Program-made: the position numbers and the translations under genes | Shown: piece by piece, positions 33,885 through 57,233 of the stretch | Layout of the letters: each line of letters starts with the position of its first letter | Position numbering within the stretch: the first letter of the stretch is position 1 | Assembly: GCA_037447605.1 (NCBI GenBank) | Contig: CM074818.1 | Coordinates: forward strand, 1,810,617-1,874,616 | DNA: 64,000 nt | Source of the DNA: Zygnema circumcarinatum SAG 698-1b | Lineage: Eukaryota > Plantae > Zygnematophyceae | Reading direction: 5' to 3' | The notes under the pieces: generated by a model | Told to the model about the DNA's origin: nothing | The model's database searches: none | Seen by the model: the letters and a program-made list of their open reading frames with translations, nothing else

Positions 33885-33935
<51 letters not shown>

Positions 33936-34127: not shown

Positions 34128-35318
34128 TTACTCCTCCTGTTGCGGCAACCGCACACTAAACCTCTCCATAAAAGCAGCGTTCGATCTCAAAAAAAGTGAT
34201 CCCAGAGGATAATTATTGTGTCCAATCCCGGCCTTCATAAGCGCCACGTGTCGCAGCTTCAGCCGGTTCTCTAAGGAGAGCTTCAGAATGTTGGGGTAAA
34301 TAATGAGCTCCTCCTTACTACGGCCCATCTCAGTCAATACAAATTCGATCTTGGACTTGATAGTATTCCAAGAACTGCTAAGAAGTGAAGGCACAGTCTT
34401 CACCATCTTCAAGGTTGGAAGCTCTCCGAAGTTCTCCACCAGATGTTTATACATGTTCTCCATTGAACCCCGGGATGCTAGTAATACCAGTGGGCTACTC
34501 TGCATAATTTTCTGAGCGTGCTCGGGTCCCAATATCGCCTCCAATCCAGCCACAGCATTCTTTAAGTGATGGCTGCTTCTAAAAACGATGCAGGGGAATA
34601 GGAGGAGCACATTCCTTCCTACCTCGCTGGAGAAGGTCGACCTCACAGCCTCGACTCCCTCCCTTATTGTTTCAGGACTGAAGGCGAGCACTGTTGGATA
34701 CCTCTCCAACATAGCGCCTGTGACAGGGACGTCTAACTCCTCGAATAGCCGAGCCTTCGCCTCAAGAGTCTGCACACGGCATGATAAAAGCATCGGCTGT
34801 CTGCCTACCACCTTTCCTAAGTTCGTCACTTTCATAGAGCTCCGCAGGAACTCGAACACGTCTTCCTGCTTCTCATCTGGAGCGAGGAGGAAGTTGCCCT
34901 TCAAGCCAACAAGCCGTTGTAATGCATTAAAATAATCGTGCGAGTCGATCCCATGGCTCTGGAAGAGGGCCGCTTTAGAGAGGATATGCTTATGGCCCCT
35001 TATAAGAACATTCTTCTTCTTATGAACGAGGTGGCGGACCTGCTCCTGCGTGTATCCTAAGCTCAGGAGAGCGTCGACTGCTTCTCGGAGAGCGCTCTTC
35101 GACACCGCAGCTTTTTCTTCGGCCATGGCGGCTCTGCCTGCACTTGCTTTGTCAAGCTTTTCGCCCTCCCTGCTGCTGCTATTGCTACTGTATCCATGGT
35201 GGCCTTGCAGGGACTGAGTACAAGTGAGCTGCTCAAGGGATGGGTAGCGCCATGGCAGGCGGAAGGGAGCTCCGATCCAGACGGTGCGGCGAAATAAAGG
35301 AAGAAAGAAAACCGCCAT
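34128..35318 (-). CDS. mTERF: mTERF-family protein, copy A (intronless, 396 aa, N-terminal organellar transit-like peptide)
   Basis: Tandem ~32-36 aa repeats with the mTERF signature (GRQPMLLSCRVQTLEAK, RYPTVLAFSPETI, IYPNILKLSLENRLKLR); R/S/hydrophobic N-terminus. Confidence 0.9.
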   Translation of the reverse strand: MAVFFLPLFRRTVWIGAPFRLPWRYPSLEQLTCTQSLQGHHGYSSNSSSREGEKLDKASAGRAAMAEEKAAVSKSALREAVDALLSLGYTQEQVRHLVHKKKNVLIRGHKHILSKAALFQSHGIDSHDYFNALQRLVGLKGNFLLAPDEKQEDVFEFLRSSMKVTNLGKVVGRQPMLLSCRVQTLEAKARLFEELDVPVTGAMLERYPTVLAFSPETIREGVEAVRSTFSSEVGRNVLLLFPCIVFRSSHHLKNAVAGLEAILGPEHAQKIMQSSPLVLLASRGSMENMYKHLVENFGELPTLKMVKTVPSLLSSSWNTIKSKIEFVLTEMGRSKEELIIYPNILKLSLENRLKLRHVALMKAGIGHNNYPLGSLFLRSNAAFMERFSVRLPQQEE

Positions 35319-35391
35319 GGCGCCCTTCGGAGTGTCAGCACCCCCTGGTAGACATTTGCTACCTCATCTCTTCGTGGAAAGGCGTCCAGCT

Positions 35392-35520
35392 CTCAACCCT
35401 AACCCCTCCTAACCCTAACCCTGGCCATAACTCTAACCCTAACCCTAACCATGACTAACCCTAACCCCATCTAACCCTAATCCCTAAACCTAATGTCGAA
35501 AGCCCCTAACCTAATAATAA
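35392..35520 (-). repeat. (CCCTAA)n telomere-like/telo-box array directly upstream of mTERF A (equivalents at 40126-40300, 44950-45290, 51893-51993, 57308-57430)
   Basis: ctaaccctaaccct... arrays 70-200 bp upstream of each mTERF start codon. Confidence 0.9.
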
Positions 35521-35627
35521 CCCTCTCTGAGCTCCCTCCAGGATTGTGGGGTCGAGTTGTGAACCGAGCGCTCCCCTCCCCACAAAAAATAGCACTGGTC
35601 TTGTGCAGGTCCGCCTGGGAGGGAACT

Positions 35628-35920
35628 CACAGAACTGGAACTGTAACTGTTTTTTATAACAACTGTGTTTCAACTGTACTTCAACTATAATCCGACTGGA
35701 ACTGTAACTAGCACCGTTGATCCATGTATAACTGGAACTGTAACTGCCACTTTAACAGTCACTGTAACATTAGTTGTAACTATATTTGGAACTGGAAATG
35801 TTCATGTTCACGTAACTGTAACTGTCACTGTAGCCATCCTGTACCTTCGAATATATCTGTAACTATAACTACAACCGTCACGGCAACAGTGACATTGGCT
35901 TTAACTGTAACTGTAACCCG
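35628..35920. repeat. Degenerate hexamer array (ACTGGA/ACTGTA)n upstream of mTERF A (equivalents at 40420-40600, 45320-45570, 51640-51670, 57540-57580)
   Basis: actggaactgtaactg... repeats, visible directly. Confidence 0.85.
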
Positions 35921-36001
35921 CCCGCCCCGGCCTTTCCCGGTACGGCACAGCGCCCAGGCGGGCACGCCGGCCGAGCGCCCGGTCACCTACGGTCACCGCG
36001 G

Positions 36002-36073
36002 TGCCACGTGCCACGTCGTTGCCACGACGACCCCACGTCGGTGCCACGAGGGTGCCACGTCGGCGTCACGTCG
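36002..36073. promoter_or_regulatory. Array of GCCACGT (G-box/ABRE-like) motifs (second copy at 40722-40786)
   Basis: tgccacgtg, tgccacgtc, tgccacgac, ccccacgtc, tgccacgag, tgccacgtc, gtcacgtc within 72 bp. Confidence 0.45.
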
Positions 36074-37564
36074 ACTGAACCCATTGACTTCGACCAAGGG
36101 CGGGTCCTCCCGCCTGCCTGCCCGCCCGCTGAGAGCGGTGGTGGTGCGGACAAGAAAGCGGCAGTGGAGAGCGGCACTCCGATGATGAAGGCAGCTAACG
36201 CAACAGCCATTGATGGTTTGGTGCGAGCTTTGAAAGGGCGGGGAGCAGCTCAAAGAGGGAGCAGCGGAGATGCTCGTGATGCTTTGGGAATTGTTGGAAA
36301 AGAACCTGCTCGAGATAAAGACTTTTTCAAGAAATAAAGACTTTTTCAAGAATTTCAAGAAGGCCGTAAAGCATCATTGGGGACCAAAAGGAAAGTGGTG
36401 AGGAGACCCAAAACGAGGAAAGGCTGAGTTCGAGCCTGAAGGCATGCAGTCAAACACACTTGATAATGTCACATTCAAGCAGAGCCCCCTCAATAAAATT
36501 ACATCCAGGTAAATTAGCCTTTCAAGTTCCACGCAGACAAAGAGGACCTCAATAAAGTTAAATCCAAACAAAATTGCCCTCAAAAAAGTTGCACTCGGAT
36601 ATAATACCCTCGATGACTGTTTATTCAAACCAAAAGGCCCGCAATAAAGACATACGCAAGGAAAAGGCGCTCAATAAAGACATATCCAGAAAAAGGGTAA
36701 AAAAATAAAGGAAAAGTAAAAACTTAGAAGCACTATAAAAACCTTTCAAAAAAGATGAACGCTTATAGTCGTTTATCCCAACTAATTAAGTAATAACGCA
36801 GAGACGGAGAAGTTGTAGGCTGATGTTACCCTCACAGTTTTGGAGAGGATAAAAAGGGGAGAAGCTGTAGGGGAAACGAGAGGCTTTCAGAGTTGTGAAT
36901 TTTGGCAGTAATCGAAAACCAGTGGCATTGAGGAAATGATCCTTTAAAACAAGAATTTCGGATCATAAGATACACAAATCAAAACAATAGAGAAACTCAT
37001 CAAGCTGCATAGGGTTTTCAGAATCAGACAATTCAAAATCGTCGCAAGGAAATATTCATTGTTTCCTACATTTTGGGAGGGAGGGAGAGGAGGAGAGCGA
37101 AGGGAGCGGGGGGTGGGAGAGAAAGTGGAAGGGGGGGCGAGAGAGGGAGAGGGAGACAAAGGGAGAGGGGGAGGGAGGGAGGGGAGGGAGGGAGGGAGGG
37201 AGGGAGGGAGGGAGGACGTTGAGATGGCGAAGAAAGAGCGAGGGAGACGGAGTGAGAGGTGGGATCAAAGAGAGCCCGGAGCTCTTGCATATTGAGATCA
37301 TACCGAGGTGGAGGTAGAGGGAGAGGGTGAAAGAGAGTGGGAGAGGAGAGAGAGACTGGGAGAGAGGGGGAGAAAGAGAGAGTGGGAGAGTGGGAGAGGG
37401 AGGTGGCCCATGCTTCATTTTCCAATGTTGGCTCGCAACCCTTTGTCTCCTTCTGCTGAAGGTGGGGAGAGGCAGCGTCCAAGTGATCGGTGGACCCAGT
37501 TCCACCCTAAACCCCGACAGGGTGGAATCAGAGGGAGGCAGCCTAAAGGGGTGCACTGGTACAG

Positions 37565-37950
37565 GAGGGGAGGAGTGATCCGCAAGCAAAGGACTTGTCT
37601 ATAGTGTGTGCCTCCTCATCCTACAAAAAGCAAAAGGGCTTCGAGTGATGTCAGCTGAGATGCACTCACTACCCCCAAAACCGTAAAAATCTAAAAGCCT
37701 TCAAACCCTAATTCCGTACAAGCCCTCAACAGCGTTATTTGTGCAACAGATAAACCCTTCAATTCGGCTGATCCTCCCTCTCTCCCTCCCCCTCTCCCTC
37801 CCTCTCTCCCTCCCGGAAAAACCTCATGTGGACGGTTACCAAGCCTGGATAGAATTCTTTTCTGGAATCCCTTTTCAATAGTATTTGAGAACTTTAGATT
37901 CCTGATCTGTTACCAAAGGTTGGCGGCCGCTTACCACTGCAACGAAAGCC
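37565..37950 (-). pseudogene. ZYP1 last intron/exon relic (cassette B), acceptor TTTTTGTAG retained
   Basis: The reverse strand reads gctttttgtag|gat gag gag gca cac act ata gac aag tcc ttt gct tgc gga tca ctc... Confidence 0.7.
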
Positions 37951-38882
37951 GAGTGTTGTGTACCTCCCTCCCTCCCTCTCTCCCTCCCCCCGGTTCGCTA
38001 GTTCCTCCCCTCCATCCCTCTCGCCCCCCCCTCTCTCTCTCTCACTCTCTCTCTCCGCCCCCTTCCACTGCGCCCTCTCGCCCTCCCAACGAACCAATGC
38101 AGAACCTTTGGGGCCATTTTACTCGCTCTGCCTGTTCTGTAGACGCTCGAGCTGCTTTACACGAACGGAAGACTGCCCTCAAATATCTGTCACTAAGTCT
38201 AACCAACCCTAACAAATAAACAACTTAATCCTAACCCTAAACCTAAGTCTAATCTTAACCCTAAATCGGCCCGAAATTAACCCTAAATCGGCCCGGAATT
38301 AACCCTAAATCGGCCCGAAATTAATCCTAAATCTTAACCTTCCCCCTCGCCAAAAAACTCTTACGTGAGCACAAAGTTCTCACCCCCCTCATCTCCTCCA
38401 AACGAGCTGTGTGCTTGGCACACAACCTCTTCTTCTTCTTCAACCAACCTCTGTAACCTCTTCTTTTCTTCACTATACAAACTTAATACCTTGTTTTTCT
38501 CTAAGAACGAACCCTAGTTCGGCTTTGCAAGTTGTGCTCAAACCGCAAATGCCAACAGAGTCCGCTGCCCACTAAAAAATGTATCGCATTTCAACACAGC
38601 GCATGCAGTTGGCGCACTCACAAGGGGCTCCGATGGGGTCATCTCTCTCCCTCGCTCTCACGCTCTCTCTCCCTCTCCCTCTCGGCAGCTTGACATTCCC
38701 ACCACAATTCCCACACATGTGAGAGAGCACCTGCTGTGCAAAAGCCAATCTCAGCCACACCATCCTACGCCACCGCCAACTTTTTTCCACTGTTGGGAAA
38801 ATTATTTGGTGACCTCAACATAAGGCCTTCCCTTTTTGTGACATTTTATTTACATAAGCCAAAGCACGCCTCCGCCTTACTC

Positions 38883-40067
38883 CTACTGTTGCGGCAACCG
38901 CACACTAAACCTCTCCATAAAAGCAGCGTCCGATCTCAAAAACAGTGATCCCAGAGGATACTTATTGTGTCCAATCCCGGCCTTCACAAGCGCCTCATAT
39001 CGCAGCTTCAGCCGATTCTCTAAGGAGAGCGACAAAATGTTGGGGTAAATGATGAGCTCCTCTTTATTACGGCCCATCTCAGTCAATACGAATTCGATCT
39101 TGGACTTGATAGTATCCCAAGAGCTGCTAAGAAGTGTAGGCGCAGCCTTCACCATCTTCAAAGTCGGAAGCTCTCCGAAGTGCTCCACCAGCTGCTTGAA
39201 CGTATTTTCCATTGTCTCCCGTGTTGACAATAGTATCCGCGGGTTACATCGAAGCATTTTCTGAGCGCTCTCGGACCCCAAAATCTTCTCCAATCCAGCC
39301 ACAGCATTCTTGAAGTGATGGCTGCTTCTAAAAACGATGCAGGGGAATAGGCGGAGCAGATTCCTTCCTACCTCGCTGGAGAATGTCGACCTCACAGCCT
39401 CGACTCCCTCCCTTATTGTTTCAGGACTGAAGGCGAGCACTGTTGGATACCTCTCCAACATAGCGCCTGTAACAGGGACGTCTAACTCCTCGAATAGCCG
39501 AGCCTTCGCCTCAAGACTCTGCACACGGCAAGATAAAAGCATAGGCTGTCTGCCTACCACCTTTCCTAAGTTCGTCACTTTCATAGAGCTCCGCAGGAAC
39601 TCGAACACGTCTTCCTGCTTCTCATTTGGAGCGAGGAGGAAGTTGCCCTTCAAGCCAGCAAGCCGTTGTAATGCATTAAAATAATCGTGCGAGTCGATCC
39701 CATGGCTCTGGAAGAGGGCCGCTTTAGGGAGGATGTGCTTATGGCCCCTTATAAGAACATCCTTCTTCTTATGAACGAGGTGGCGGACCTTCTCCTGCGT
39801 GTATCCTAAGCTCAGGAGAGCGTCAACTGCTTCTCGGAGAGCGCTCTTCGACTCCGCAGCTTTTTCTTCGGCCATGGCGGCTCTGCCCACAGTAACTTTG
39901 TCAAGCTTTTCACCCTCCCTGCTGCTGCTATTGCTGCTGTATCCATGGCGGCCTTGCAGGGACAGAGTGCAGGTGAGCTGCTCAAGGGATGGGTAGCGCC
40001 ATGGCAGGCGGAATGGAGCTCCGATCCAGATGGTGCGGCGAAATAAAGGAAGAAAAAAAACCGCCAT
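38883..40067 (-). CDS. mTERF: mTERF-family protein, copy B (intronless, 394 aa)
   Basis: Intact ORF collinear with copy A, with the same repeat motifs. Confidence 0.9.
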   Translation of the reverse strand: MAVFFLPLFRRTIWIGAPFRLPWRYPSLEQLTCTLSLQGRHGYSSNSSSREGEKLDKVTVGRAAMAEEKAAESKSALREAVDALLSLGYTQEKVRHLVHKKKDVLIRGHKHILPKAALFQSHGIDSHDYFNALQRLAGLKGNFLLAPNEKQEDVFEFLRSSMKVTNLGKVVGRQPMLLSCRVQSLEAKARLFEELDVPVTGAMLERYPTVLAFSPETIREGVEAVRSTFSSEVGRNLLRLFPCIVFRSSHHFKNAVAGLEKILGSESAQKMLRCNPRILLSTRETMENTFKQLVEHFGELPTLKMVKAAPTLLSSSWDTIKSKIEFVLTEMGRNKEELIIYPNILSLSLENRLKLRYEALVKAGIGHNKYPLGSLFLRSDAAFMERFSVRLPQQ

Positions 40068-42264
40068 GTCAGCACCCCCTGGTAGACAGTTGCTACCTCA
40101 TCTCTTCGTGGAAAGGCGTCCAGCTCTCAACCCGAACCCTAACCTAACCCTAACCCTGGCCCTAACCCTAACCCTAACCCTAAATCTAACCCTAACCCTA
40201 AATCTAACCCTAACCCTAACCCTAACCATGACTAACCCTTACCCCATCTAACCCTAATCCTAACCCTAATCCCTAACCCTAATGTCGAAAGCCCCTAACC
40301 TGATCATAACCCTACCTGAGCTCCCTCCAGAATTGTGGGGTCGAGTTATCCGCCAAGCCCTCCCCTCCCCATGAAAAATAGCACTGCTCTTATGCAGGCC
40401 CGCCTGGGAGGGCACTCACAGAACTAGAACTGGAACTAGAACTGTCACTGCACCTTAAACTTGAACTGTTCATGGTGACTATAACTGAGACAGAAACAGC
40501 AACTGGAATCGTGAATGTACCTGTAACTGTCACTGCAACTGTTATTGTATCTGTACAGTAATTGTAATTTGAACTCTAACTTTAACTGTAACAGTAACTG
40601 GAAGGTTGGCTTCAACCGTAACTTTAAACCGCCCGCCCCAGGTCTTTCCCGGTACGGCGCAGCGCCCTGGCGGGCGACGCCGGTCGAGCGCCCGGTCACC
40701 TACGGTCACCGCGGTGCCGTGTGCCACGTCGTTGTCACGAGGATGCCACGTCGGTGCCACGTGGGCGCCACGTTGGTGTCACGTCGATTGAACCCATTGA
40801 CTTTGACGAAGGGCGGGTCGTCCTGTCCTTGACTTGCTCGTCCGCCCGCCGCCATACAGCGCGAGCGAGGGAAGGCCCCGCCTGCCTGCCCGCCCGCTGA
40901 GAGCGGTGGTGGTGCGGACAAGAAAGCGGCAGTGGAGAGCGGCACTCCGATTATGAAGGCCGGCAGCGCAACAGCCATTGATGGTTTGGTGCGAGCTTTG
41001 AAAGGGCGGGGAGCAGTTCAAAGGGGGAGCAGCGGAGATGCTCGTGATGCTTTGGAAATTGTTGGAAAAGGACCTGATTGAGATAAAGACTTTTTAAAGA
41101 AGGCCGTAAAGCATCATTGGGGACCAAAAGGAAAGTGGTGAGGAGACCCAAAACGAGGAAAGGCTGAGTTCGAGCCTGAAGGCATGCAGGCGAACACCCT
41201 TGATAATGTCACATCCAAACAGAGGCCCCTCCATAAAATTACATCCAGGTAAATTAGCCTTTCAAGTTCCACGCAGACAAAGCCGGCCTCAATAAAGTTA
41301 CATCCAAACAAAATTGCCCCCAATAAAGTTGCACTCGGATATAGTACCCTCGATGAAGTTGTATTCAAATCAAAAGCCCCGCAATAAAGTCACACATCGG
41401 GGAAATAGTTCTCAATAAAGTCACATTCAGACAAAGGTAAGAAGTCAGGAAAAAATAAAAACTTTGAATCGCTATATAAACCTTTTAAAAAAAGTGACCG
41501 CTTATAGTTGTTTATCCCAACTAATTAAACAATAACGCAGAGATGAAGAAGTTGAAAGCTGATGTTACCCTTACAGGTTTGGAGCGGATAAAAAGGGGAG
41601 AAGCTGTAGGGGAAAGGAGTGGCTCTCAGAGTTGTGAATTTTGGCGGTAATCGAAAACTGCTTGCATTGAGGAAGTGATCCTTTAGGAAAATAGGAAAAT
41701 AGGGGTTTCAGAATCGGACAATTCAAAATCGTCGCCAGGAAAATATTCATTGTTTCCTTCATTTTGGAAGGGAGGGATGGAGAGGAAGAGAGAGAAGGGC
41801 GGGGGGGGGGGGAAGAAAGTGGAAGGGGGGGCGAGGGAGGCAGAGGGAGAGAAAGAGAGAGGGGGAGGGAGAGAGGGAGGACGTTGAGATGGCGAAGGGA
41901 GGGCGAGGGAGACGGATTGAGAAGTGGGATAGAGAGCCCTGAGCTCTTGCAGATTGAGATCATACCGAGGTGGAGGTAGAGAGAGAGGGGGAGAGAGAGT
42001 GGGACTGGGGAGAGAGAGTGGGAGAGGGGGAGAACGAGAGTGGGAGAGTGGGAGAGTGGGAGAGAGAGGGGGGGAGAGAGAGAGGGCGAGAGAGTGGGAG
42101 AGAGAGAGTGGCCCATGCTTCATTTTCCAATGTTGGCTCGCAACCCTTTGTCTCCTTCTGCTGAAGGTGGGGAGAGGCAGCGTCCAAGTGATCGGTGGAA
42201 GCAGTTCCACCCTAAACCCCGACAGGGTGGAATCAGAGGGAGGCAGCCTAAAGGGGTGCACTGG

Positions 42265-42650
42265 TACAGGAGGGGAGGAGTGATCCGCAAGCAAAGGACT
42301 TGTCTATAGTGTGTGCCTTCTCATCCTACAAAAAGCAAAAGGGCTTCGAGTGATGTCAGTTGAGATGCACTCACTACCCCCAAAACCGTAAAAAAATCTA
42401 AAAGCCTTCAAACCCTAATTCCGTATAAGCCCTCAACAGCGTTATTTCTGCAACAGATAAACCCTTCAATTCGGCTGATCCTCCCTCTCTCCCGCTCTCT
42501 CCCCCTCCCGGAAAAACTTCATGCGGACGGTTACCAAACCTAAAGCATAGGATTCTTTTCTGGAATCCCTTTTCAATAGTATTTTGGAACTTTAGATTCC
42601 TGATCGGTTACCAAATGTTGGCGGCCGCTTACCACTGCAACGAAAGCCGA
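42265..42650 (-). pseudogene. ZYP1 last intron/exon relic (cassette C)
   Basis: gagtgatccgcaagcaaaggacttgtctatagtgtgtgccttctcatcctacaaaaagc, the same as the other relics. Confidence 0.7.
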
Positions 42651-43668
42651 GTTTTGTGTACCTCCCTCCCACCCTCCCTCCCTCCCTCCCCCTCCCTCCC
42701 TCCCTCTCTCCCTCCCCCGGCTTCGCTAGTTCCTCCCCTCCATCCCTCTCGCCCCCCCCTCTCTCTCTCTCTCTCCCTCTCTCCGTCCCTTTCCACTGCG
42801 CCCTCTCCCATCTCCTCCGTCGCCCTCCCAAAGTACCAATGCAGAACCTTTGGGGCCATTTTCCTCGCTCTGCCTGTTCTGTAGACGCTCGAGCTGCTTT
42901 ACACGAACTCAAATATCTGTCACTTAGTCGCCTTCTCAGTCTATCTATTTCTCGTTTTCTCCTAAGTTCCACCTGAATTCTTCTCTTCGTTCTCAGTCCC
43001 CTCGTCTCCCGCCTCTCTCTCCCTCTATCCTTCTCTCCCTCTTCCCCTGCTTCGCTCACACTTTCTCGCCCATTCTCTTTCCATCCTTTCTCCTCGCCCT
43101 GAACCTCATTCCCTCTCCTGTTTTCTGCTCACTTTGCCACTCTCTGTTATATCGTACTGTCGCTCTCCCAACCCTCCCTCGACTTTGTCTCTATGTTCAC
43201 CTCATTTTCCTTCCTTGCGCTTACTTTCCCTCTCCCGTTTTTTGCTCGATCTCTCTCTCCCTCTCTCCCCTTCTCCCACCCCCTCTCCGTTTTTCTATCC
43301 CTATATTTGCCTGTCCTCTTCCCTCTTCCTTTCTCCCTGTTTCGTTTTGCATTCTTTTCCACGCCCTCCGCTTCTCGTCCGCCATCTCTTGCTCTCGCTC
43401 GCTCTCTCTCTCTCTCTCTCCCGCTTCGACCTCTCTCTCGGTCTCACTTCCTCCCTTCTCCACCCTCTCTCCGTTTCTCCAAAGCGAACAAAACGAACTT
43501 CAAACGTATCATGCAAGCTGATTGCTTTCAGGGTTTCCGTTGAAACCCAACGAAACTTCAGTTTCAGAAAGCAACAATACCGCCCCTTCTTTTGTGCTCT
43601 CGTGAGCCTCCTTGTGCAAATGTGCACAAGAGATGAAACCACTTGTTTGGCCAAATCACACCCTCGAC

Positions 43669-44904
43669 TTACGTCGGTAGTTGTGGCAACCGAACTTTAA
43701 ACCTCTTCATAAAATCAGCGTTTGCTGGCAAGAACAATAGTCCCAGTGGAAGCTTCTCGTTTCCAATCCCTGCCTTTACGAGCGCCTTATATCGCGGCTT
43801 GAGCCGGTTCTCTAAGGAGAGCTTCAGAATGGACGGATAAGTGAGGATCTCCTCTTTACTACGGCCCATCTCAGTCAATACAAATTCGATCTTGGACTTG
43901 ATCGTATCCCAAGACCTGCTAAGAAGTGAAGGCTGCGCCTGCACCATCTTCAAGGTTGGAAGCTCTCCGAAGTTCTCCACCAGCTGTTTATACATGTTCT
44001 CCATTGTACCCCGGGATACTAACAATACCTGCGGGTTACTTCGAAGCATTTTCTGAGCGCTCTCGGACCCAAAAATCTCCTCCAATCCAGCCACAGCATT
44101 CTTGAAGTGATGGCTCTTCCTTAGAATGATGCAGGGGAATTGGAGGAGCACGGTCCTTCCTACCTCGCTGGAGAAGGTCGACCTCACAGCCTCCACTCCC
44201 TCCCTTATTGTTTCAGGACTGTAGGAGAGAAGCGTTGGATACCTCTCTAACATAGCGCCTGTGACAGGGACGTCTAACTCCTCCCATAGCCGAGCCTTCG
44301 CCTCAAGAGTCTGCACACGGTATGATAAAATCATTGGCATTCTGCCTACCATCTTCCCTACGTTCTCCACCTTCACAAAGGTCCGCAAGAACTCGAACAC
44401 GTCTTCCTGCTTCTCATCGGGAGCGAGGAGGAAGTTGCCGTACACGACGCTGCGTCCTAATGCATTAAAAAAATCGTTGGAGTCGATCCCATGGCGCTGG
44501 AAGAAGGCTGCTTTAGTGAGGATGTGCTTATGGCCTCTTATAAGGACATTCGTCTTCTTATCAACGAGGTGGCGGACCTTCTCCTGCGTGTATCCTAAGC
44601 TCAGGAGAGCGTCGACTGCTTCTCGGAGAGCACTCTTCGACTCCGCAGCTTTTTCTTCCGCCATGGCGGCTCTGCCTGCACTCGCTTTGTCAAGCTTTTC
44701 GCCCTCCCTGCTATTGCTGCTATTGCTGCTGTATCCGTGGCGGCCTTGTAGGGACTGAGTGCAAGTGAGCTGCTCAAGGGATGGGTAGCGCCATGGCAGG
44801 CGGAAGGGAGCTCCGATCCAGACGCTGCGCCGAAAAGAAGAAAGAAAGATAACCGCCATGGCCGACTTCTGAATGTATGCAGGCGTTGCTACTGGGTAAC
44901 GCAC
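43669..44904 (-). CDS. mTERF: mTERF-family protein, copy C (most divergent; real start probably the MAVIF ATG at ~44859)
   Basis: Intact ORF; distinct C-terminus (GNEKLPLGLLFLPANADFMKRFKVRLPQLPT) and unique flanks. Confidence 0.9.
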   Translation of the reverse strand: MRYPVATPAYIQKSAMAVIFLSSFRRSVWIGAPFRLPWRYPSLEQLTCTQSLQGRHGYSSNSSNSREGEKLDKASAGRAAMAEEKAAESKSALREAVDALLSLGYTQEKVRHLVDKKTNVLIRGHKHILTKAAFFQRHGIDSNDFFNALGRSVVYGNFLLAPDEKQEDVFEFLRTFVKVENVGKMVGRMPMILSYRVQTLEAKARLWEELDVPVTGAMLERYPTLLSYSPETIREGVEAVRSTFSSEVGRTVLLQFPCIILRKSHHFKNAVAGLEEIFGSESAQKMLRSNPQVLLVSRGTMENMYKQLVENFGELPTLKMVQAQPSLLSRSWDTIKSKIEFVLTEMGRSKEEILTYPSILKLSLENRLKPRYKALVKAGIGNEKLPLGLLFLPANADFMKRFKVRLPQLPT

Positions 44905-47649: not shown

Positions 47650-49055
47650 GTGCCAATACAATTTACTATTAGAAAGCGTCAGCATTTTGACGAAGGTGGG
47701 GGGAAAGTTATCGAAATGAAGGTAGATGTGCCTCAGGAGAGAGGACTGGAGAGGGAGAATGGGAGGGAAGGGAAAAGTGAGGGGGTTTACTGCGGCAGAG
47801 TAGAGGCGGCTGTGGAGGAGAGGAGCAGAGAGATAGAAGTGGGAGGCATGCAGAAGAGTGTGGGATTTGAACGAGGGTGGGCGTGTGCAAGTGTAGTAGA
47901 TCACTCTCATTGTTCAGTTGATTGTGAGAAAGGGGGACATGTTGAAATAGCCGAAAGAGCAGAAAAAGGAGATGCCTTAGACTTGCATGACTTGGAGCTC
48001 CTGATCAATACAACGCATGAGAAGTCGACACAGGGAGTCTCTGACATCGCCGAGAAGGATGGAGAGGGAGAGTTGGAGGGAGAGGAGCTAGACTGGGTTG
48101 TAGAGGATGCCAATACAGACAGCGATGGAGAGGAGAGTGGTGACCAGGATGAAGAAGAGTGGGAGGTAGAAGAGATTGAGAGAATAGAGTTTGCAGAAGA
48201 GACTGAAGAGGAGTGGGAGGTAGAGGATTTTCAAGAGCCAGAAGAGGAGAATATTGGGACCCCTGTGGAGCCCACCAGTGACATGAGGAGGAGACGGCTT
48301 TCAAAATATGAGATAAAATGTCCTCCCGGAGGGGAGGAGGGAGTGGTAGTGTACACCACCTCCCTCGGAGGTATTCGCAAAACGTTTGCAGATTGCAACA
48401 ATGTGCGGCAAATAATGGAGGTAAGTTTCATTTGTGAATTGTATGCTATTTTGTTAGATTACTGCAATTTTGTTTTTGCTTCGTCCTGCTACTCTGCCTC
48501 ATATTCTTATCAAGATAAAGATTGGCAGCGTGCAATGAAGAAAGCCGAAGCCATTTACATGCTTTCCTGATGAAGCAGAAGAACTAAGGCCTCTCATTTC
48601 CTGAACGGTTTCTTCTATGGCACTGCGCATTGAACCCTAAAAAGATCCTCTAGGAAACCCCGAAACTTTGATTTTGATTGCAGGGCTTCCGACTGCAATT
48701 TGACGAAAGGGATATCTCTATGCACTCTCAGTTTCGAACGGAACTGTCTACTCTCATGGGCGGCCCTTCTAAAGTTCCGCAACTTTTCATTCGCGGCTAT
48801 CATATTGGAGGAGTTGATGAAGTGGTGCGTCTCAGCGAGGAGTCGGAGCTTGACGTGTTGCTGGAAGGCATTCCGAGAGTGATTGGAACTCGAAAGACAT
48901 GTGATGCATGTGGAGGACTCAAATTTATACCCTGCCCGGAATGTTCGGGCAGCCATAAAGTAGTTTATGATGACGGCACGAAGGAACGTTGCCCCGACTG
49001 TAATGAGTACGGACTTGCCCTCTGCCCTCTCTGTACTACCTGCATTGGAGGTTGA
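47650..49055 (+). CDS. Plant glutaredoxin-like domain protein with an acidic N-terminal region and a Cys-rich C-terminal tail
   Basis: VVVYTTSLGGIRKTFADCNNVRQIME / GFRLQFDERDISMH...VPQLFIRGYHIGG...CDACGGLKFIPCPECSGSHK...CPDCNEYGLALCPLC; intron 48421-48682 is GT-AG. The 5' end is unresolved (first in-frame ATG at 47716). Confidence 0.85.
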
Positions 49056-50951: not shown

Positions 50952-51303
50952 CGAAATTTTCCCTGCTCTTATAGACCGTTTACCTTTTCCCCCTTTTTAC
51001 CTTTTGATAGTAAAACTTGCCACGGATTAGAGCACATCTGAAGGTTTGAGGCTCTTCTATGAAAAGTATTGCAAGCCTGATGAGCGTTGCTTACGTCAGC
51101 ACACACACACACAAACACTGGGATCAAGTCCCCTTCTTTCTCCACAACACGAGGAGGGCAGGCTGCGATTGATTCTCCATGTTGTTGTTGTTGTTGTTGG
51201 CCATGTTGGCCTTTCATGAGACCAATGCAAATATGCATGCGATTGAGCCCCGGTATCTGCCATGAGGCAAAGCCAAAAATAACAGCGAAATGAGCACGAC
51301 CGT

Positions 51304-51347
51304 ACAATTGACGACCGTACGAATACGGTCGTACGGTCGTCAATTGT
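51304..51347. repeat. Perfect 19-bp inverted repeat with a 6-nt loop
   Basis: acaattgacgaccgtacga-atacgg-tcgtacggtcgtcaattgt. Confidence 0.95.
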
Positions 51348-52069
51348 TCAAAACGAGTGGGTATAATATATGTAATAAAGTGTTTTACTTTGTAATATAT
51401 TACTACTTTTAAACCCGTTGTAAAATATATAATGTATTCGGAATTTATAACGCGGGTCGTGCGACTCGTAAGACAGAGGACGGTCTCTAGGAACAAAACC
51501 CTGTCGCTCAGAGGCACACAAAAGCTCGGAAACTGAACCCTGGCCCGGACCCTAAACCGCCCCTCTGGTTTATTTTCCGCATGGGAAGAAAGCTAGATCC
51601 GCAACAAACCATCCCTTCTGGTTGTTTTAGGCACTCACAGAATTGGAACTGGAACTGGAACTGGAACTGCAGTAGTGCAGCATAGAGTCCTGTTGGATGC
51701 TCACATGATTCTGCAATTTGGCCGAAAATTGCAAGTACTGTACGTGCGTTGCCCTCTCAGGCGGACCTGCACAACAGCAGTGCTATTTTTCATGGGTAGG
51801 GGAAGGCTCGGCGGATCACTCGACCCCACAATTCTGGAGGGAGCTCAGAGAGGGTTATGATCAGGTTAGGGGCTTTCGACATTAAGGTGAGGGATTAGGG
51901 TTAGGATTAGGGTTCGATGGTGTTAGGGTTAGTCATGGTTAGGGTTAGGGTTAGGGTTAGGGCCAGGGTTAGGGTTAGGTTAGGGTTAGGGTTGAGTGTT
52001 AGAAGCCTTTCCACGAAGAGATGAGGTAGCAAATGTCTACCAGGGGGTGCTGACACTCCGAAGGGCGCC

Positions 52070-53245
52070 ATGGCGGTTTTCTTTCTTCCTTTATTTCGCC
52101 GCACCGTCTGGATCAGAGCTCCCTTCCGCCTGCCATGGCGCTACCCATCCCTTGAACAGCTCACTTGCACTCAGTCCCTGCAAGGCCGCCATGGATACAG
52201 CAGCAATAGCAGGGAGGGTGAAAAGCTTGACAAAGCGAGTGCAGGCAGAGCCGCCATGGCCGAAGAAAAAGCTGCGGAGTCGACGAGCGCTCTCCGAGAA
52301 GCAGTCGACGCTCTCCTGAGCTTAGGATACACGCAGGAGAAGGTCCGCCACCTCGTTGAGAAGAAGAAGAGTATTCTTATAAGAGGCCATAAGCACATCC
52401 TCCCTAAAGCAGCCTTCTTCCAGCGCCATGGGATCGACTCGCACGACTTTTTCAACGCATTACAACGCAGCGCTTTGTACGGCAACTTCCTCTTCACCGC
52501 AGATGAGAAGCAGGAAGACGTGTTCGAGTTCCTGCGGAGCTCTATGAAAGTGACGAACTTAGGAAAGGTGGTAGGCAGACTGCCGATGCTTTTATCATCT
52601 CGTGTGCAGACTCTTGAGGCGAAGGCTCGGCTATGGGAGGAGTTAGACGTCCCTGTTACAGGCGCTATGTTAGAGAGGTATCCAACGCTGCTCTGCTGCA
52701 GTCCTGAAACAATAAGGGAGGGAGTCGAGGCAGTGAAGTCGACCTTCTCCAGCGAGGTAGGAAGGAACGTGCTCCTCCAATTCCCCTGCATCATTCTAAG
52801 GAAGAGCCATCACTTCAAGAATGCTGTGGCTGGATTGGAGGAGATGTTGGGACCCGAGCGCGCTCAGAAAATTATACTGAGTAACCCACTGGTATTATTA
52901 GCATCCCGGGGTACAATGGAGAACATGTATAAACATCTGGTGGAGAACTTCGGAGAGCTTCCAACCTTGAAGATGGTGAAGTCTGCGCCTACACTTCTTA
53001 GCAGGTCTTGGGCTTCGATCAAGCCCAAGATTGACTTCGTATTGACTGAGATGGGCCGTAGTAAAGAGGAGCTCATCATTTACCCCAACATTTTGTCGCT
53101 CTCCTTAGAGAACCGGCTGAAGCTGCGACACGTGGCGCTTATGAAGGCCGGGATTGGACACAATAAGTTTCGTCTGGGATCACTGTTTTCGATATCGAAC
53201 GCTGCTTTTATGGAGAGGTTTAGTGTGCGGTTGCCGCAACAATAG
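52070..53245 (+). CDS. mTERF: mTERF-family protein, copy D (inverted relative to the others, 391 aa)
   Basis: Intact ORF. Both flanks are reverse complements of the flanks of copy A (51760-52070 vs 35320-35620; 53250-55790 vs 31860-34120). Confidence 0.9.
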   Translation: MAVFFLPLFRRTVWIRAPFRLPWRYPSLEQLTCTQSLQGRHGYSSNSREGEKLDKASAGRAAMAEEKAAESTSALREAVDALLSLGYTQEKVRHLVEKKKSILIRGHKHILPKAAFFQRHGIDSHDFFNALQRSALYGNFLFTADEKQEDVFEFLRSSMKVTNLGKVVGRLPMLLSSRVQTLEAKARLWEELDVPVTGAMLERYPTLLCCSPETIREGVEAVKSTFSSEVGRNVLLQFPCIILRKSHHFKNAVAGLEEMLGPERAQKIILSNPLVLLASRGTMENMYKHLVENFGELPTLKMVKSAPTLLSRSWASIKPKIDFVLTEMGRSKEELIIYPNILSLSLENRLKLRHVALMKAGIGHNKFRLGSLFSISNAAFMERFSVRLPQQ

Positions 53246-53443
53246 AAGTAAGGTGGAGGCGTGCTTTGGCTTATGTAAATAAAAATGTCACAATAAGGGA
53301 AGGCCTTATGTTGAGGTCACCAAATAATTTTCCCAACAGAGGAAAAGAGTTGGCGGTGGCGTATGATGGTGTGGCTGAGATTGGCTTTTGCACAGCAGAT
53401 GCTCTCTCACATGTGTGGGAATTGTGGTGGGAATGTCAAGCTG

Positions 53444-53489
<46 letters not shown>

Positions 53490-53659
53490 CGAGAGGGATG
53501 GAGGGGAGGAACTAGCGACCCGGGGGGTGGGAGGGAGCTGCTCCTGTCGGTGCGCACATGCAAGCTGAAAATCAAGCGTCCGAGGGGGGATTTAGGGAGG
53601 GCGAGAGGGAGGGAGGGAGGGAGGTACACAAAACTCGGCTTTCGTTGCAGTGGTAAGCG

Positions 53660-54010
53660 GCCGCCAACCTTTGGTAACCGATCAGGAATATAAAGTTCCA
53701 AAATACTATTGAAAAGGGATTCCAGAAAAGAATTCTATGTTCCAGGCTTTGTAACCGTCCACAAGAGGTTTTTCCGGGCGGGAGAGAGGGAGGATCAGCC
53801 GAATTGAAGGGTTGATCTGTTCCACAAATAACGCTGTTGAGGGCTTGTATGGACTAAGGGTTTGAAGGCTTTTAGATTTTTACAGTTTTGGGGGTAGTGA
53901 GTGCATCTCAACTGACATCACTGGAAGCCCTTTTTCCTTTTGTAGGATGAGAAGGCACACACTATAGACAAGTCCTCTGTTTGCGGATCACTCCTCCCCT
54001 CCTGTACCAG
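53660..54010 (+). pseudogene. ZYP1 last intron/exon relic (cassette D, inverted)
   Basis: cagtg|gtaagcgg ... ttccttttgtag|gatgagaaggcacacactatagacaagtcctctgtttgcggatcactc. Confidence 0.7.
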
Positions 54011-56051
54011 TGCACCCCTTTAGGCTGCCTCCCTCTGATTCCACCCTGTCGGGGTTTAGGGTGGAACTGGGTCCACCGATCACTTGGACGCTGCCTCTCC
54101 CCACCTTCAGCAGAAGGAGACAAAGGGTTGCGAGCCAACATTGGAAAATGAAGCATGGGCCACTCTCTCTCTCCCACTCTCTCGCCCGCTCTCTCTCCCC
54201 CCCTCTCTCTCCCACTCTCCCACTCTCTTTCTCACCCTCTCTCCCACTCTCTTTCTCCCTCTCTCTCCCACTCTCTTTCTCCCTCTCTCTCCCACTCTCT
54301 TTCTCCTCTTGCACTCTCCCCCCCTCTCTCTCTACCTCAACCTCGGTATGATCTCAATCTGCAAGTACTCAGGGCTTCCTTTGTTCCCTTGTCTCCATCG
54401 CCCTCCCTTCGCCATCTCAATGTCCTCCCTCTCTCCCTCCCTCCCTCCCCTCCCTCCTCCTCTCCCTTTCTCTCCCTCTTCCTCCATTGGGCCCCCTTCC
54501 ACTTCCTCTCCCACCCCCCGCTCCCTTCTCTCTCTTCCTCTCCATCCCTCCCTCCCAATGAATATTTCCTGCGACGATTTTGAATTGTCCGATTCTGAAA
54601 ACCCTATGCAGCTTAATCAGTTCCCTATTATTTTGATTTGTTTATCTTATGATCCTCAATTCTTCTTCTAAAGGATCACTTCCTCAATGCAACTGGTTTT
54701 CGATTACTCCCAAAATTCACAACTCTGAAAGCCTCTCGTTTGCCCTACAGCTTCTCCCCTTTTTATCCACTTCAAAACTGTAAGGGTAACATCAGCCTAC
54801 AACTTCTCCGGCTCTGAATCATTACTTAATTAGTTGGGATAAACAACTTTAAGCGTTCACCTTTCTTTAAAGGTTACTATAGCGCTTCAAAGTCTTTACT
54901 TTTTCTTTACTTTTTACCATTTGTCTGGCTGTGATTTTATTGAGCGCCTTCTTCCTTGCGTATGTCTTTATTGAGGGCCTTTTGATTCGAATACAACTTT
55001 ACCGAATGTATTGTATCCGGCATAACTTTACTGCTGGTTTTTTTTTGTCTACATTAAACTATGTTGAGGCCTTCTTTGTCTGCGCGGAACCTTGTCGTTT
55101 ACCTGTATGTAATTTTATTGAGGGGTCTCTTTTTGGATGTGACATTATCAAGGGTGGTCGGCTGCATCCCTTCAGGCTCGAATTCAGCCCTTCCTCGTTT
55201 TGGGTCTCCTCACCACTTGGCTTTTGGTCCCCAATGATGATGGCGGCAATGCTTTGTTGTGCACGTTAACGATGATGTAGTTATCGCCAACATCATAATT
55301 GGGACGAATTGGACCACATCTCCATCCGAAGCTCCCACAATCCCTTACAACTCTCAGTCCATTTGTGCAGCATTAGTCACAAGATAAACCAAAAAACCAG
55401 CAAGAACCTAAAGCCTGAAAACCACCACCCCAAACATCTCAAACTAAGCTTGCAATGCATTTTTTGACACTTTCCTTCATGACTAACAAAAGAGAGAATT
55501 TCTTCCTTTTCACCGTTTGGACCTGAGATCATTTGTATCTTAAGCCATTCTATTGCTTATCGACGAGGAGTTCTCTAACCCTAAATTCCGCCTCGTTAAA
55601 TGCTCTCAAAACCCGAAGGCTATCTCCGCATTTTCGTCATTTTTTTACCCTTTGATTCATCCAAGCGCAGAAGAATGGCGCACTATTTGAGTTGATCCTT
55701 CTGAAGGATGTTTTGGTCCACATACTCTTCTTCACTGCCGGAGGATTGTGAAGATCTGCGGGCAAAAGCCTCTCTCTCTCTCTCCCACTCTCTCTCTCCC
55801 TCACTCTCTCTCCCCGCTCCTCCCCCCCCTCTCTCTCTTCTCTCTCTCTCGAGGCAGCTTAACATCCCCACCACGATTCCCACACATGTGAGAGAGCATC
55901 TGCTGTGCAAAAGCCAATCTCAGCCACACCATCATACGCCACCGCCAACTTTTTTCCTCTGTTGGGAAAATTATTTGGTGACCTCAACATAAGGCCTTCC
56001 CTTTTTGTGACATTTTATTTACATAAGCCAAAGCACGCCTCCGCCTTACTC

Positions 56052-57233
56052 CTACTGTTGCGGCAACCGCACACTAAACCTCTCCATAAAAGCAGCGTTC
56101 GATCTCAAAAAAAGTGATCCCAGAGGATACTTATTGTGTCCAATCCCGGCCTTCACAAGCGCCACGTGTCGCAGCTTCAGCCGGTTCTCTAAGGAGAGCT
56201 TCAGAATGGAGGGGTAGATAATGAGCTCCTCCTTACTACGGCCCATCTCAGTCAATAGGAAGTCCATCTTGGGCTTAATCGAAGCCCAAGTCCTGCTAAT
56301 AAGTAAGGGCTGCGCCTGCACAATTTTCAAAGTCGGAAGCTCTCCGAAGTGCTCCACCAGCTGCCTGTACGTGTTTTCCATTGTCTCCCGTGTTGACAAG
56401 AGTATCCGCGGGTTACTTCTAAGCATTTTCTGAGCGCTCTCGGACCCAAAAATCTCCTCCAATCCAGCCACAGCATTCTTGAAGTGATGGCTGTTTCTGT
56501 AAACGATGCAGGAGAAGAGGACAAGCACATTCTCTCTTACCTCGCTGGAGAAGGTCGACCTCACAGCCTCGACTCCCTCCCTTATTGTTTCAGGACTGTA
56601 GGAGAGCAGCGTTGGATACCTCTCCAACATAGCCCCTGTGACAGGCAAGCCTAACTCCTCCCATAGACGAGCCTTCGCCTCAAGAGTCTGCACACGGCAT
56701 GATAAAATCAACGGCATTTTGCCTATCACCTTTCCTAAGTTCGTCACTTTCATAGAGCTCCGAAGGAACTCGAACACGCCTTCCTGCTTCTCATCGGGAG
56801 CGAAGAGGAGGTTGCCGTACAAGCCACTGCGTTCTACAGCATTAAAAAAATTGTCCGAGTCCATCCCATGGCGCTGGAAGAAGGCTGCTTTAGGGAGGAT
56901 GTGCTTATGGCCTCTTATAAGAATACTCTTCTTCTTATTAACGAGGTGGAGGACCTTCTCCTGCGTGTATCCTAAGCTCAGGAGAGCGTCGACTGCTTCT
57001 CGGAGAGCGCTCTTCGACACCGCAGCTTTTTCTTCGGCCATGGCGGCTCTGCCTGCACTTGCTTTGTCAAGCTTTTCACCCTCCCTGCTGCTGCTATTGC
57101 TACTGTATCCATGGCGGCCTTGCAACGACTGGGTGCAAGTAAGCTGCTCAAGGGATGGGTAGCGCCATGGCAGGCGGAAGGGAGCTCCGATCCAGTCGGT
57201 GCGGCGATAAAAGGAAAGAAAAAAAACCGCCAT
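56052..57233 (-). CDS. mTERF: mTERF-family protein, copy E (393 aa), convergent with copy D
   Basis: Intact ORF with the same repeat structure. Confidence 0.9.
   Translation of the reverse strand: MAVFFLSFYRRTDWIGAPFRLPWRYPSLEQLTCTQSLQGRHGYSSNSSSREGEKLDKASAGRAAMAEEKAAVSKSALREAVDALLSLGYTQEKVLHLVNKKKSILIRGHKHILPKAAFFQRHGMDSDNFFNAVERSGLYGNLLFAPDEKQEGVFEFLRSSMKVTNLGKVIGKMPLILSCRVQTLEAKARLWEELGLPVTGAMLERYPTLLSYSPETIREGVEAVRSTFSSEVRENVLVLFSCIVYRNSHHFKNAVAGLEEIFGSESAQKMLRSNPRILLSTRETMENTYRQLVEHFGELPTLKIVQAQPLLISRTWASIKPKMDFLLTEMGRSKEELIIYPSILKLSLENRLKLRHVALVKAGIGHNKYPLGSLFLRSNAAFMERFSVRLPQQ

What the first reader, a model, noticed from the sequence alone, without database searches (positions are those of the whole stretch)
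34128..57233. Array of five intact mTERF paralogs that vary at the same positions in every repeat (RFL-like diversifying cluster)
Scaffold helices are almost invariant (ETIREGVEAVRSTFSSEV, HHFKNAVAGLE, FGELPTLKMV, LENRLK). The residues around each repeat's Pro motif differ between copies A/B/C/D/E: GRQPMLLSC/GRQPMLLSC/GRMPMILSY/GRLPMLLSS/GKMPLILSC; PTVLAF/PTVLAF/PTLLSY/PTLLCC/PTLLSY; SSPLVLLAS/CNPRILLST/SNPQVLLVS/SNPLVLLAS/SNPRILLST; TVPSLLSSS/AAPTLLSSS/AQPSLLSRS/SAPTLLSRS/AQPLLISRT; QRLVGLKG/QRLAGLKG/GRSVVYG/QRSALYG/ERSGLYG. mTERFs are modular organellar nucleic-acid binders. Clustered, fast-evolving organelle-targeted repeat proteins are known from RFL-PPR and RFL-mTERF loci in cereals and the NCL (OPR) cluster in Chlamydomonas. 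The inference is a repertoire of sequence-specificity variants, possibly in a nuclear-organelle arms race, in a non-cereal lineage. It could also help reveal an mTERF recognition code.
Basis: partly seen in the sequence, partly recalled or inferred. Interest (0 to 1): 0.85.

Follow-up and report, generated by a model that had tools for sequence, protein, structure and literature searches.

The report
Tandem mTERF gene array in alga
Five intact, recently duplicated genes for organelle-type nucleic-acid-binding (mTERF) proteins sit side by side in what is probably a green alga close to land plants; they swap segments and differ mainly at the repeat positions that face DNA in the human relative, but selection for diversity is not proven.

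Summary
Five intact, intronless mTERF genes of 391-396 aa, 80-89% identical, lie in about 4.7-kb duplication units. Three are tandem and two convergent.

Amino-acid differences follow the repeat register. 51 of 90 codons within -4..+6 of each repeat's S-loop proline vary, against 56 of 200 elsewhere (p=6e-6). Synonymous changes show no such periodicity. In human MTERF1 the base-contacting residues sit at these same registers.

The copies are a mosaic of exchanged segments: all 10 possible two-versus-three splits occur, in blocks (p<0.0005).

Diversifying selection is not shown. Overall omega is 0.48. M1a/M2a and M7/M8 give p=0.38, and M8a/M8 gives p=0.085. About half the sites are frozen and about half evolve at roughly the neutral rate.

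All five reading frames staying open by chance has P of about 3.5e-6, so the scaffold and presequence are under constraint.

The closest relatives are zygnematophyte algal mTERFs, at most 41% identical. The five copies form their own clade.

Tandem, fast-evolving mTERF clusters are already described in seed plants. This is an independent algal example of a known kind, and moderately interesting. The scan also noted a second mTERF array elsewhere in this genome.

The parts
34128..35318 (-). mTERF copy A, 396 aa, intact and intronless
   Evidence: ORF. Pfam PF02536 E 6.7e-30. AlphaFold2 model pLDDT 86, best fold match human MTERF1-DNA.
38883..40067 (-). mTERF copy B, 394 aa, 89% identical to A
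43669..44859 (-). mTERF copy C, 396 aa from the ATG at 44859. Its flanks and last 88 nt are strongly diverged, but its first 300 nt are near-identical to the other copies.
   Evidence: K=0.05-0.09 in the 5' CDS, 0.34-0.38 in the 3' CDS and above 0.5 in the flanks.
52070..53245 (+). mTERF copy D, 391 aa, inverted relative to A-C and convergent with E
   Evidence: Copy-specific mismatch-free contigs at depth 100-200 in a run guessed to be RNA.
56052..57233 (-). mTERF copy E, 393 aa
   Evidence: A copy-specific contig at 56326-56481 in the same run.
32667..41240 (.). Two full tandem duplication units of about 4.7 kb (32667-36500 and 37319-41240, 84% identical over 4 kb). Each holds one mTERF gene plus about 3.5 kb of spacer rich in purine/pyrimidine microsatellites.
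42007..44876 (.). Third, partly rearranged unit carrying copy C
   Evidence: 42007-42929 and 43650-44876 match unit A..
51744..57575 (.). Inverted pair of units. D and its downstream spacer span 51744-55775, and E spans 55829-57575. The arms are 89% complementary.
   Evidence: (I1, I3, I5-I8).
35407..35493 (.). Telomere-like (CCCTAA)n tract 90-175 nt upstream of the ATG of copy A. Equivalent tracts lie upstream of B (40131-40282), C (45013-45247), D (51895-51991) and E (57336-57410), always in the same orientation relative to the gene.
   Evidence: 44 matches in the window against 0.28 expected.

Best explanation
This is a young, lineage-specific tandem array of five functional nuclear genes for mTERF proteins. 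mTERFs are helical-repeat proteins that bind organellar DNA or RNA.

Shown:
- The array arose by segmental duplication of a roughly 4.7-kb unit: three direct copies and one inverted pair.
- The copies have since exchanged short segments by gene conversion or unequal recombination, so each gene is a different mosaic of two or three variants per segment.
- Selection keeps the presequence and the helical scaffold of all five.
- The residues from -4 to +6 around each repeat's S-loop proline change at about the neutral rate. In human MTERF1 this is the part that tracks the DNA groove and carries the base-contacting residues.

Inferred:
- The five proteins are imported into an organelle, and a mitochondrial-type leader is favoured.
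- They share one architecture but present different nucleic-acid-contact surfaces. The array would then act as a small, recombination-shuffled repertoire of binding variants for different or changing organellar DNA/RNA sites.
- Whether this diversity is driven by positive selection or merely tolerated is not settled by five sequences.
For: - Intact ORFs with the mTERF domain.
- Model pLDDT 86, with residues 1-55 disordered. It has seven canonical three-helix repeats plus two degenerate ones, and its best fold match is MTERF1 bound to DNA, TM 0.66.
- The profile matches MTERF1, 3 and 4 in the PDB.
- Register mapping of MTERF1 R162, R169, R202, F243, R251, F322 and R350 to Pro-2, +5, +1, +1, +9, +4 and +1. 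The chain-numbering offset was checked on eight residues.
- Register periodicity and enrichment of amino-acid variation.
- Omega is 0.21 for the presequence, 0.38 for the scaffold and 0.72 for the proline zone. dN of the zone is about equal to dS.
- All frames staying open by chance has P of about 3.5e-6.
- Mosaic structure.
- The five copies form a clade with 100% support on a long stem, next to unnamed transcript-derived proteins. The named neighbours are Closterium and Mesotaenium proteins only.
- Depth over D and E is 5-10 times the spacer depth in two runs but not in a DNA run, and copy-specific contigs are present.
Against: - No codon model shows omega above 1. The best-fitting picture, half the sites at omega near 0 and half near 1, is what relaxed constraint on exposed positions would give.
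- The MTERF1-derived a-priori contact registers are enriched for variable columns (p=0.007). Their own N:S ratio, however, does not differ from the rest (Fisher p=0.86).
- Recombination invalidates a single tree, and five sequences give little power.
- Model coordinates could not be read, so the claim that the variable residues face the groove rests on register homology with MTERF1, not on measured distances.
- No targeting predictor was run.
- The kind of the 'RNA?' runs is the tool's guess, and contig depth is a poor measure of expression.
- No target sequence is known.
Confidence: 0.5

Rival explanations
1. The copies are redundant under relaxed constraint. The array is a recent segmental duplication whose members do the same job. 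The variable positions are simply the least constrained exposed residues of the repeat and drift at the neutral rate, while gene conversion mixes the variants.
For: - M1a fits as well as M2a, with about 49% of sites at omega=1.
- M7/M8 gives p=0.38.
- Proline-zone omega is 0.72 with a CI that spans 1, and dN of the zone is about equal to dS.
- The same positions are also unconserved across the wider family consensus.
Against: - The other exposed turn of the repeat is not variable.
- In MTERF1 these registers carry the functional base contacts. Free drift there implies either loss of specific binding or changed specificity.
- All five copies keep open frames, scaffold and presequence despite dS of 0.13-0.29.
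- 19 zone columns carry three or more residues, including charge changes.
Confidence: 0.35
2. The array is a dosage amplification under concerted evolution. It is kept for more product of one mTERF activity, and gene conversion homogenises the copies.
For: The 5' 300 nt of the CDS, the promoter-proximal 400 nt and the 3' flank are 90-100% alike among A, B, D and E. Copy C shares a near-identical 5' CDS despite unrelated flanks.
Against: Homogenisation stops short of the repeat region. There, 131 of 397 columns differ, and segment variants with up to about 25% nucleotide difference persist side by side. Pure dosage selection would not preserve that.
Confidence: 0.1
3. A transposon drove the amplification: the mTERF gene was captured and copied by a Pack-type or other mobile element.
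For: Another first-stage note reports long terminal-inverted-repeat elements around a second mTERF array elsewhere in this genome. Inverted and direct copies coexist here.
Against: A search for inverted repeats within 6 kb around units A-C returned only low-complexity GA/GGGA tracts and no terminal inverted repeats. The units are contiguous with a constant period of about 4.7 kb, as expected of unequal crossing-over.
Confidence: 0.05

Closest known systems
M-class mTERF gene clusters of seed plants (for example the 9-gene cluster on Arabidopsis chromosome 1 and the 8-gene cluster on rice chromosome 6), and the mTERF clusters co-located with restorer loci in rye, wheat and barley
   Same: Both are intronless mTERF genes in tandem clusters formed by recent lineage-specific duplication. 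Both evolve rapidly, with change attributed to nucleic-acid-binding positions, carry an organellar leader, and have been read as nuclear-organelle co-evolution (bioRxiv 10.1101/2022.01.18.476766; PMC12977773).
   Different: - M-class is described as a clade specific to 'higher plants'. The copies here group with zygnematophyte algal mTERFs, and no land-plant protein is among the named neighbours. This is therefore an independent expansion.
- Positive selection was reported for M-class sets by M7/M8. Here it is not significant.
- No link to male sterility is conceivable in the same form in an alga.
Restorer-of-fertility-like (RFL) PPR clusters
   Same: Both are clustered organelle-targeted helical-repeat proteins with a conserved scaffold. 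Variation falls at fixed positions of each repeat, and the structure is a mosaic produced by recombination or gene conversion between paralogs.
   Different: The repeat family differs (mTERF, not PPR). No recognition code is known for mTERF. Omega above 1 at the code positions, a hallmark of RFLs, is not shown here. No cytoplasmic sterility gene is known as a target.
NCL cluster of OPR genes in Chlamydomonas reinhardtii
   Same: Both are algal, recently amplified clusters of organelle-targeted helical-repeat nucleic-acid binders.
   Different: The repeat family differs (OPR versus mTERF), as does the algal lineage. This comparison rests on general knowledge of the NCL cluster and was not tested here.
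Human MTERF1 bound to its termination site (PDB 3MVA, 5CRK and related entries)
   Same: The three-helix mterf repeat superhelix is the same (Foldseek TM 0.66 by target). S-loop prolines are conserved in seven of nine repeats.
   Different: Sequence identity is only 16-17%. The Arg/Phe contact residues of MTERF1 are not conserved at the equivalent registers. The target, DNA or RNA, is unknown.

Membership tests
mTERF family (Pfam PF02536) | Significant match to the mTERF profile over several repeats | tested here: met
   E 6e-28 to 3e-34 against a gathering score of 23.1 bits, for all five copies. A family profile matches MTERF1, MTERF3 and MTERF4 chains at E 1e-20 to 1e-23.
mTERF family (Pfam PF02536) | Left-handed superhelix of roughly 33-residue three-helix repeats, each with a proline-capped S-loop | tested here: met
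   AlphaFold2 model with pLDDT above 90 over residues 70-390 and seven helix-helix-short-helix units. The best PDB matches are MTERF1-DNA complexes. Prolines sit at 175, 208, 242, 276, 310, 342 and 371.
mTERF family (Pfam PF02536) | Import into mitochondria or plastids | tested here: inconclusive
   The first 28 residues hold four or five Arg and no acidic residue. Residues 1-55 are disordered in the model and conserved among copies, with omega 0.21. No targeting predictor or experiment was available.
M-class mTERF (seed-plant clade) | Membership of the seed-plant-specific clade | tested here: not met
   In a tree of 78 mTERFs the five copies form their own clade. All named neighbours are Closterium or Mesotaenium proteins, and the best hit in 1.84 billion representatives is 41% identical. 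Named land-plant sequences were not included in the tree, so this rests on the hit ranking.
M-class mTERF (seed-plant clade) | Intronless genes in tandem clusters | tested here: met
M-class mTERF (seed-plant clade) | Site-model evidence of positive selection (M7/M8) | tested here: not met
   M1a/M2a 2dlnL=1.96, p=0.38. M7/M8 2dlnL=1.93, p=0.38. M8a/M8 p=0.085. These come from a custom implementation on a single tree with five sequences, so power is low.
RFL-like diversifying cluster (functional analogy) | Variation concentrated at the ligand-contacting positions of each repeat | tested here: met
   Register periodicity p=0.009. Proline zone 51/90 against 56/200, p=6e-6. MTERF1-contact registers 25/45 against 82/245, p=0.007. 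The contact role is inferred from MTERF1 only.
RFL-like diversifying cluster (functional analogy) | Recombination or gene conversion between paralogs | tested here: met
   All ten two-versus-three splits are present and spatially clustered. Neighbour incompatibility is 0.365 against 0.561 in permutations, p<0.0005. Copy C shows a gradient of divergence.
RFL-like diversifying cluster (functional analogy) | dN/dS above 1 at those positions | tested here: inconclusive
   Zone omega is 0.72 (CI 0.47-1.17). The post-hoc subset -3..+1 gives 1.10 (CI 0.54-3.0). dN of the zone over pooled dS is 0.62-1.37.
RFL-like diversifying cluster (functional analogy) | A matching variable organellar target, such as a sterility gene or selfish element | not testable with these tools
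   No organelle genome of this organism and no binding data were available.

The most novel reading that the evidence does not exclude
A streptophyte alga close to land plants independently evolved an RFL-like system. In this reading, gene conversion shuffles a repertoire of organelle-targeted mTERF proteins, and diversifying selection tracks changing organellar DNA/RNA elements by varying positions -4..+6 around each S-loop proline. Natural variation in this array, and in the second array in the genome, would then point directly to the specificity-determining positions of the mTERF repeat, for which no recognition code exists.
Probability: 0.25. Interest if true: 0.7.

Novelty: new member of a known kind. 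Interest (0 to 1): 0.45.

Why it matters
Clustered, fast-changing organellar repeat proteins are the nuclear side of nuclear-organelle co-evolution, and they have mostly been studied in flowering plants. A comparable mTERF array in a zygnematophyte-type alga would show that this mode of evolution is not tied to seed plants or to pollen sterility.

mTERF proteins also lack a recognition code. This array shows a clean register of variation, and by alignment those registers are the base-contacting ones in human MTERF1. That gives a short, testable list of candidate specificity positions.

The value is limited for now, because selection for diversity, organelle import, individual expression and targets are all unproven.

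Tried and rejected
- **Word-indexed homolog search with copy A:** nothing at E<=1e-5. Low-complexity words probably swamped the candidate list. The exhaustive search replaced it.
- **Exact look-up of copy A in public assemblies:** not on record.
- **Metagenome scan for related loci:** 232 pattern matches, none confirmed.
- **Terminal inverted repeats around the units:** only GA-rich low-complexity tracts, so the transposon-capture idea was set aside for this window.
- **'CDS core more diverged than neutral flanks':** only partly true. Upstream K of 0.07-0.15 is similar to fourfold-site K of 0.05-0.20, and only the 3' flank is lower at 0.03-0.06. It was not used as evidence of selection.
- **Sliding-window pN/pS:** no window is convincingly above 1. 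The maximum is 1.27, on very few changes.
- **The Cell 2010 MTERF1 structure paper (PMC2887341):** not held. The contact residues were taken from PMC4705650 and from PDB entry titles.
- **Model coordinates:** not readable from scripts, so distances of the variable residues to a docked nucleic acid could not be computed.
- **Organism name:** sequencing runs are coded. The zygnematophyte assignment is an inference from nearest named homologs.
Full report
**What is there**

The stretch 34128-57233 holds five open, intronless reading frames of 391-396 codons:
- A: 34128-35318 (-)
- B: 38883-40067 (-)
- C: 43669-44859 (-)
- D: 52070-53245 (+)
- E: 56052-57233 (-)

Each matches Pfam mTERF (PF02536) at E 6e-28 to 3e-34. 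The proteins are 80-89% identical to copy A. tblastn with the five proteins finds no further copy or fragment in the 64-kb window.

**Anatomy of the locus**

A, B and C sit in direct repeats with a period of about 4.7 kb. Units 32667-36500 and 37319-41240 are 84% identical over 4 kb. D is inverted and convergent with E.

The spacers hold purine/pyrimidine microsatellites but no terminal inverted repeats.

A degenerate telomere-like (CCCTAA)n tract lies 80-390 nt upstream of the ATG of all five genes, most of it within 220 nt and always in the same orientation relative to the gene.

About 7 kb of unrelated sequence separates C from D. It includes an ORF with a weak glutaredoxin-like signal.

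**The protein**

An AlphaFold2 model of copy A was built on 34 homologs and has mean pLDDT 86. Residues 1-55 are disordered. The rest forms two long N-terminal helices with a short helix and loop, followed by seven helix-helix-short-helix units. The two degenerate N-terminal repeats lie in that first region.

Its best PDB matches are human MTERF1 bound to DNA, with TM 0.66 by target. A profile of the family hits MTERF4, MTERF3 and MTERF1 chains at E 1e-20 to 1e-23.

The N-terminus is Arg-rich and has no acidic residue before position 29. It is conserved among the copies, with omega 0.21. It looks like an organellar leader. The organelle was not determined.

**Do the copies vary at the same positions of every repeat?**

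I put nine repeats in register on the S-loop proline. In copy A numbering the anchors are 102 and 141, where the proline is replaced, then 175, 208, 242, 276, 310, 342 and 371.

Minimum amino-acid changes per register peak at -4 to +6, with 3-12 per register. They are 1-5 per register elsewhere, and synonymous changes are flat.
- The periodicity of non-synonymous differences is significant (p=0.009). That of synonymous differences is not (p=0.20).
- Variable columns number 51/90 in the zone against 56/200 outside it (p=6e-6).
- Columns with three or more residues number 19 against 7 (p=5e-6).
- The other exposed turn, between helices 1 and 2, is not enriched.

**Why the proline zone matters**

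[quoted passage not shown] It lists R162, R202, R251, R350 and R387 as direct-readout residues. PDB titles name R162, F243, Y288 and F322 as the residues mutated in studies of the bound complex.

From the HMMER alignment to chain 5crj_O I derived a numbering offset of 72. All eight residues I checked agree with it: seven as the expected Arg or Phe, and F322 as the alanine of the F322A chain. The residues then fall at these registers:
- R162: Pro-2
- R169: Pro+5
- R202, F243 and R350: Pro+1
- F322: Pro+4
- R251: Pro+9

These a-priori registers are enriched for variable columns in the array (25/45 against 82/245, p=0.007).

This is register homology, not a measured distance. Model coordinates could not be read from scripts.

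**Selection**

Pairwise Nei-Gojobori dN/dS is 0.37-0.58, with dS of 0.13-0.29. No 30-codon window is convincingly above 1.

By class:

| Class | Omega (95% CI) |
|---|---|
| Presequence | 0.21 |
| Scaffold | 0.38 (0.26-0.58) |
| Proline zone | 0.72 (0.47-1.17) |
| Post-hoc subset -3..+1 | 1.10 (0.54-3.0) |

Against pooled dS, dN of the zone is 0.62-1.37 times dS.

I implemented GY94-type models with F3x4 frequencies on the best of the 15 topologies:
- M0 omega is 0.48.
- M1a vs M2a gives 2dlnL=1.96, p=0.38. The fit puts about 51-64% of sites near omega 0 and the rest at 1.0-1.4.
- M7 vs M8 gives p=0.38, and M8a vs M8 gives p=0.085.

Recombination usually inflates such tests, so the negative result is robust. 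Five sequences still give little power.

The genes are not decaying. Placing the observed number of substitutions at random leaves all five frames open with P of about 3.5e-6. The only indels in the coding sequence are in frame.

**Mosaic structure**

Of 86 informative two-versus-three sites, all ten possible splits occur. They come in blocks:
- AB at nt 324-637
- CD at 711-747
- AD together with BE at 792-909
- short CE, DE, BD and BC runs after that

Incompatibility between neighbouring sites is 0.365, against 0.561 in permutations (p<0.0005).

Copy C is the clearest case. Against the other copies its divergence is K=0.05-0.09 in the first 300 nt of the CDS, 0.12-0.15 in the core, 0.34-0.38 in the last 88 nt and above 0.5 in both flanks.

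The copies therefore exchange segments. Some patches may come from paralogs outside the window, since the scan notes a second mTERF array elsewhere in this genome (not examined).

**Expression**

In the run guessed to be RNA (X20) and in X12, depth over the D and E coding regions is roughly 80-530. Over the spacers it is 0-106. The DNA run X1 shows no such contrast.

Mismatch-free contigs cover copy-specific stretches of D (52702-52834) and E (56326-56481).

This suggests that at least D and E are transcribed. The run kinds are guesses, contig depth is crude, and the tool skipped the repeat tracts.

**Relatives and lineage**

An exhaustive phmmer search of 1.84 billion representatives gives best hits of only 41% and 37% identity. 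Both are transcript-derived contigs from one study.

All named neighbours are Mesotaenium endlicherianum or Closterium proteins. In a tree of 78 mTERFs the five copies form a clade with 100% support on a long stem. Four Mesotaenium paralogs likewise form their own clade. Two further Mesotaenium relatives carry neighbouring gene numbers on one scaffold.

The neighbouring FLOE-type gene (DUF1421) has Mesotaenium as its best named match.

The organism is therefore most likely a zygnematophyte alga. This is an inference, because the organism names are coded. The mTERF subfamily appears to expand independently in each lineage.

**Comparison with what is known**

A 2022 preprint describes 'M-class' mTERF genes of seed plants as intronless, tandemly clustered and fast-evolving. 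It reports M7/M8-supported positively selected sites, some at predicted nucleic-acid-binding positions, and explicitly likens them to RFL-PPR genes (10.1101/2022.01.18.476766).

A 2026 paper notes co-expansion of mTERF clusters with restorer loci in wheat and rye (PMC12977773).

Full-text searches found nothing on mTERF arrays in Zygnematophyceae.

The present array works like these clusters in organisation and mode of change. It is not a member of the seed-plant clade, and it lacks the demonstrated positive selection.

**Verdict**

The most likely reading, at about 0.5, is a small repertoire of organelle-targeted mTERF binding variants that recombination shuffles. The main rival, at about 0.35, is neutral drift at unconstrained positions in redundant copies.

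It is a new, independent algal member of a known kind of system. It is useful as a pointer to candidate specificity positions of the mTERF repeat, and of moderate interest.

Noticed in passing
window 35407-35493, 40131-40282, 45013-45247, 51895-51991, 57336-57410; also 2901-3087 and 27251-27299: Degenerate telomere-like (CCCTAA/TTAGGG)n tracts lie 80-390 nt upstream of the start codon of all five mTERF genes, most within 220 nt and always in the same orientation relative to the gene. Similar tracts occur at two other places in the window. There are 44 near-matches against 0.28 expected. They could be a telo-box-like promoter element duplicated with the units. Contigs of public runs break or run on into telomere-like sequence at about 57355.
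   Followed up: partly
window 47650-48570 (+): A 306-codon ORF lies in the 7-kb gap between copies C and D. It has no Pfam hit but a weak language-model resemblance to plant glutaredoxin-domain proteins (score 0.83, below the reliable range).
   Followed up: partly
window 9047-10453 (+): An ORF ends in a DUF1421/UBA-like domain (FLOE family, E 5e-18). Its best named relative is from Mesotaenium endlicherianum, followed by liverworts and Chara. It was used here only as a clue to the lineage.
   Followed up: partly
window 24925-26349 (+): A 474-codon ATG ORF has only weak coiled-coil-type Pfam matches (Tropomyosin, CCDC93), below the curated cut-offs.
   Followed up: no
window 37141-37215, 37772-37814, 41839-41881, 42039-42110, 42661-42718: Long GGGA/GA purine tracts and their complements recur in the spacers between the mTERF units. 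They may favour unequal exchange between units.
   Followed up: no
proteins P0027 and P0028 (Mesotaenium ME000039S06715 and ME000039S06718): Two related mTERFs of Mesotaenium carry gene numbers three apart on the same scaffold. This suggests that mTERF clustering also occurs in another zygnematophyte.
   Followed up: no
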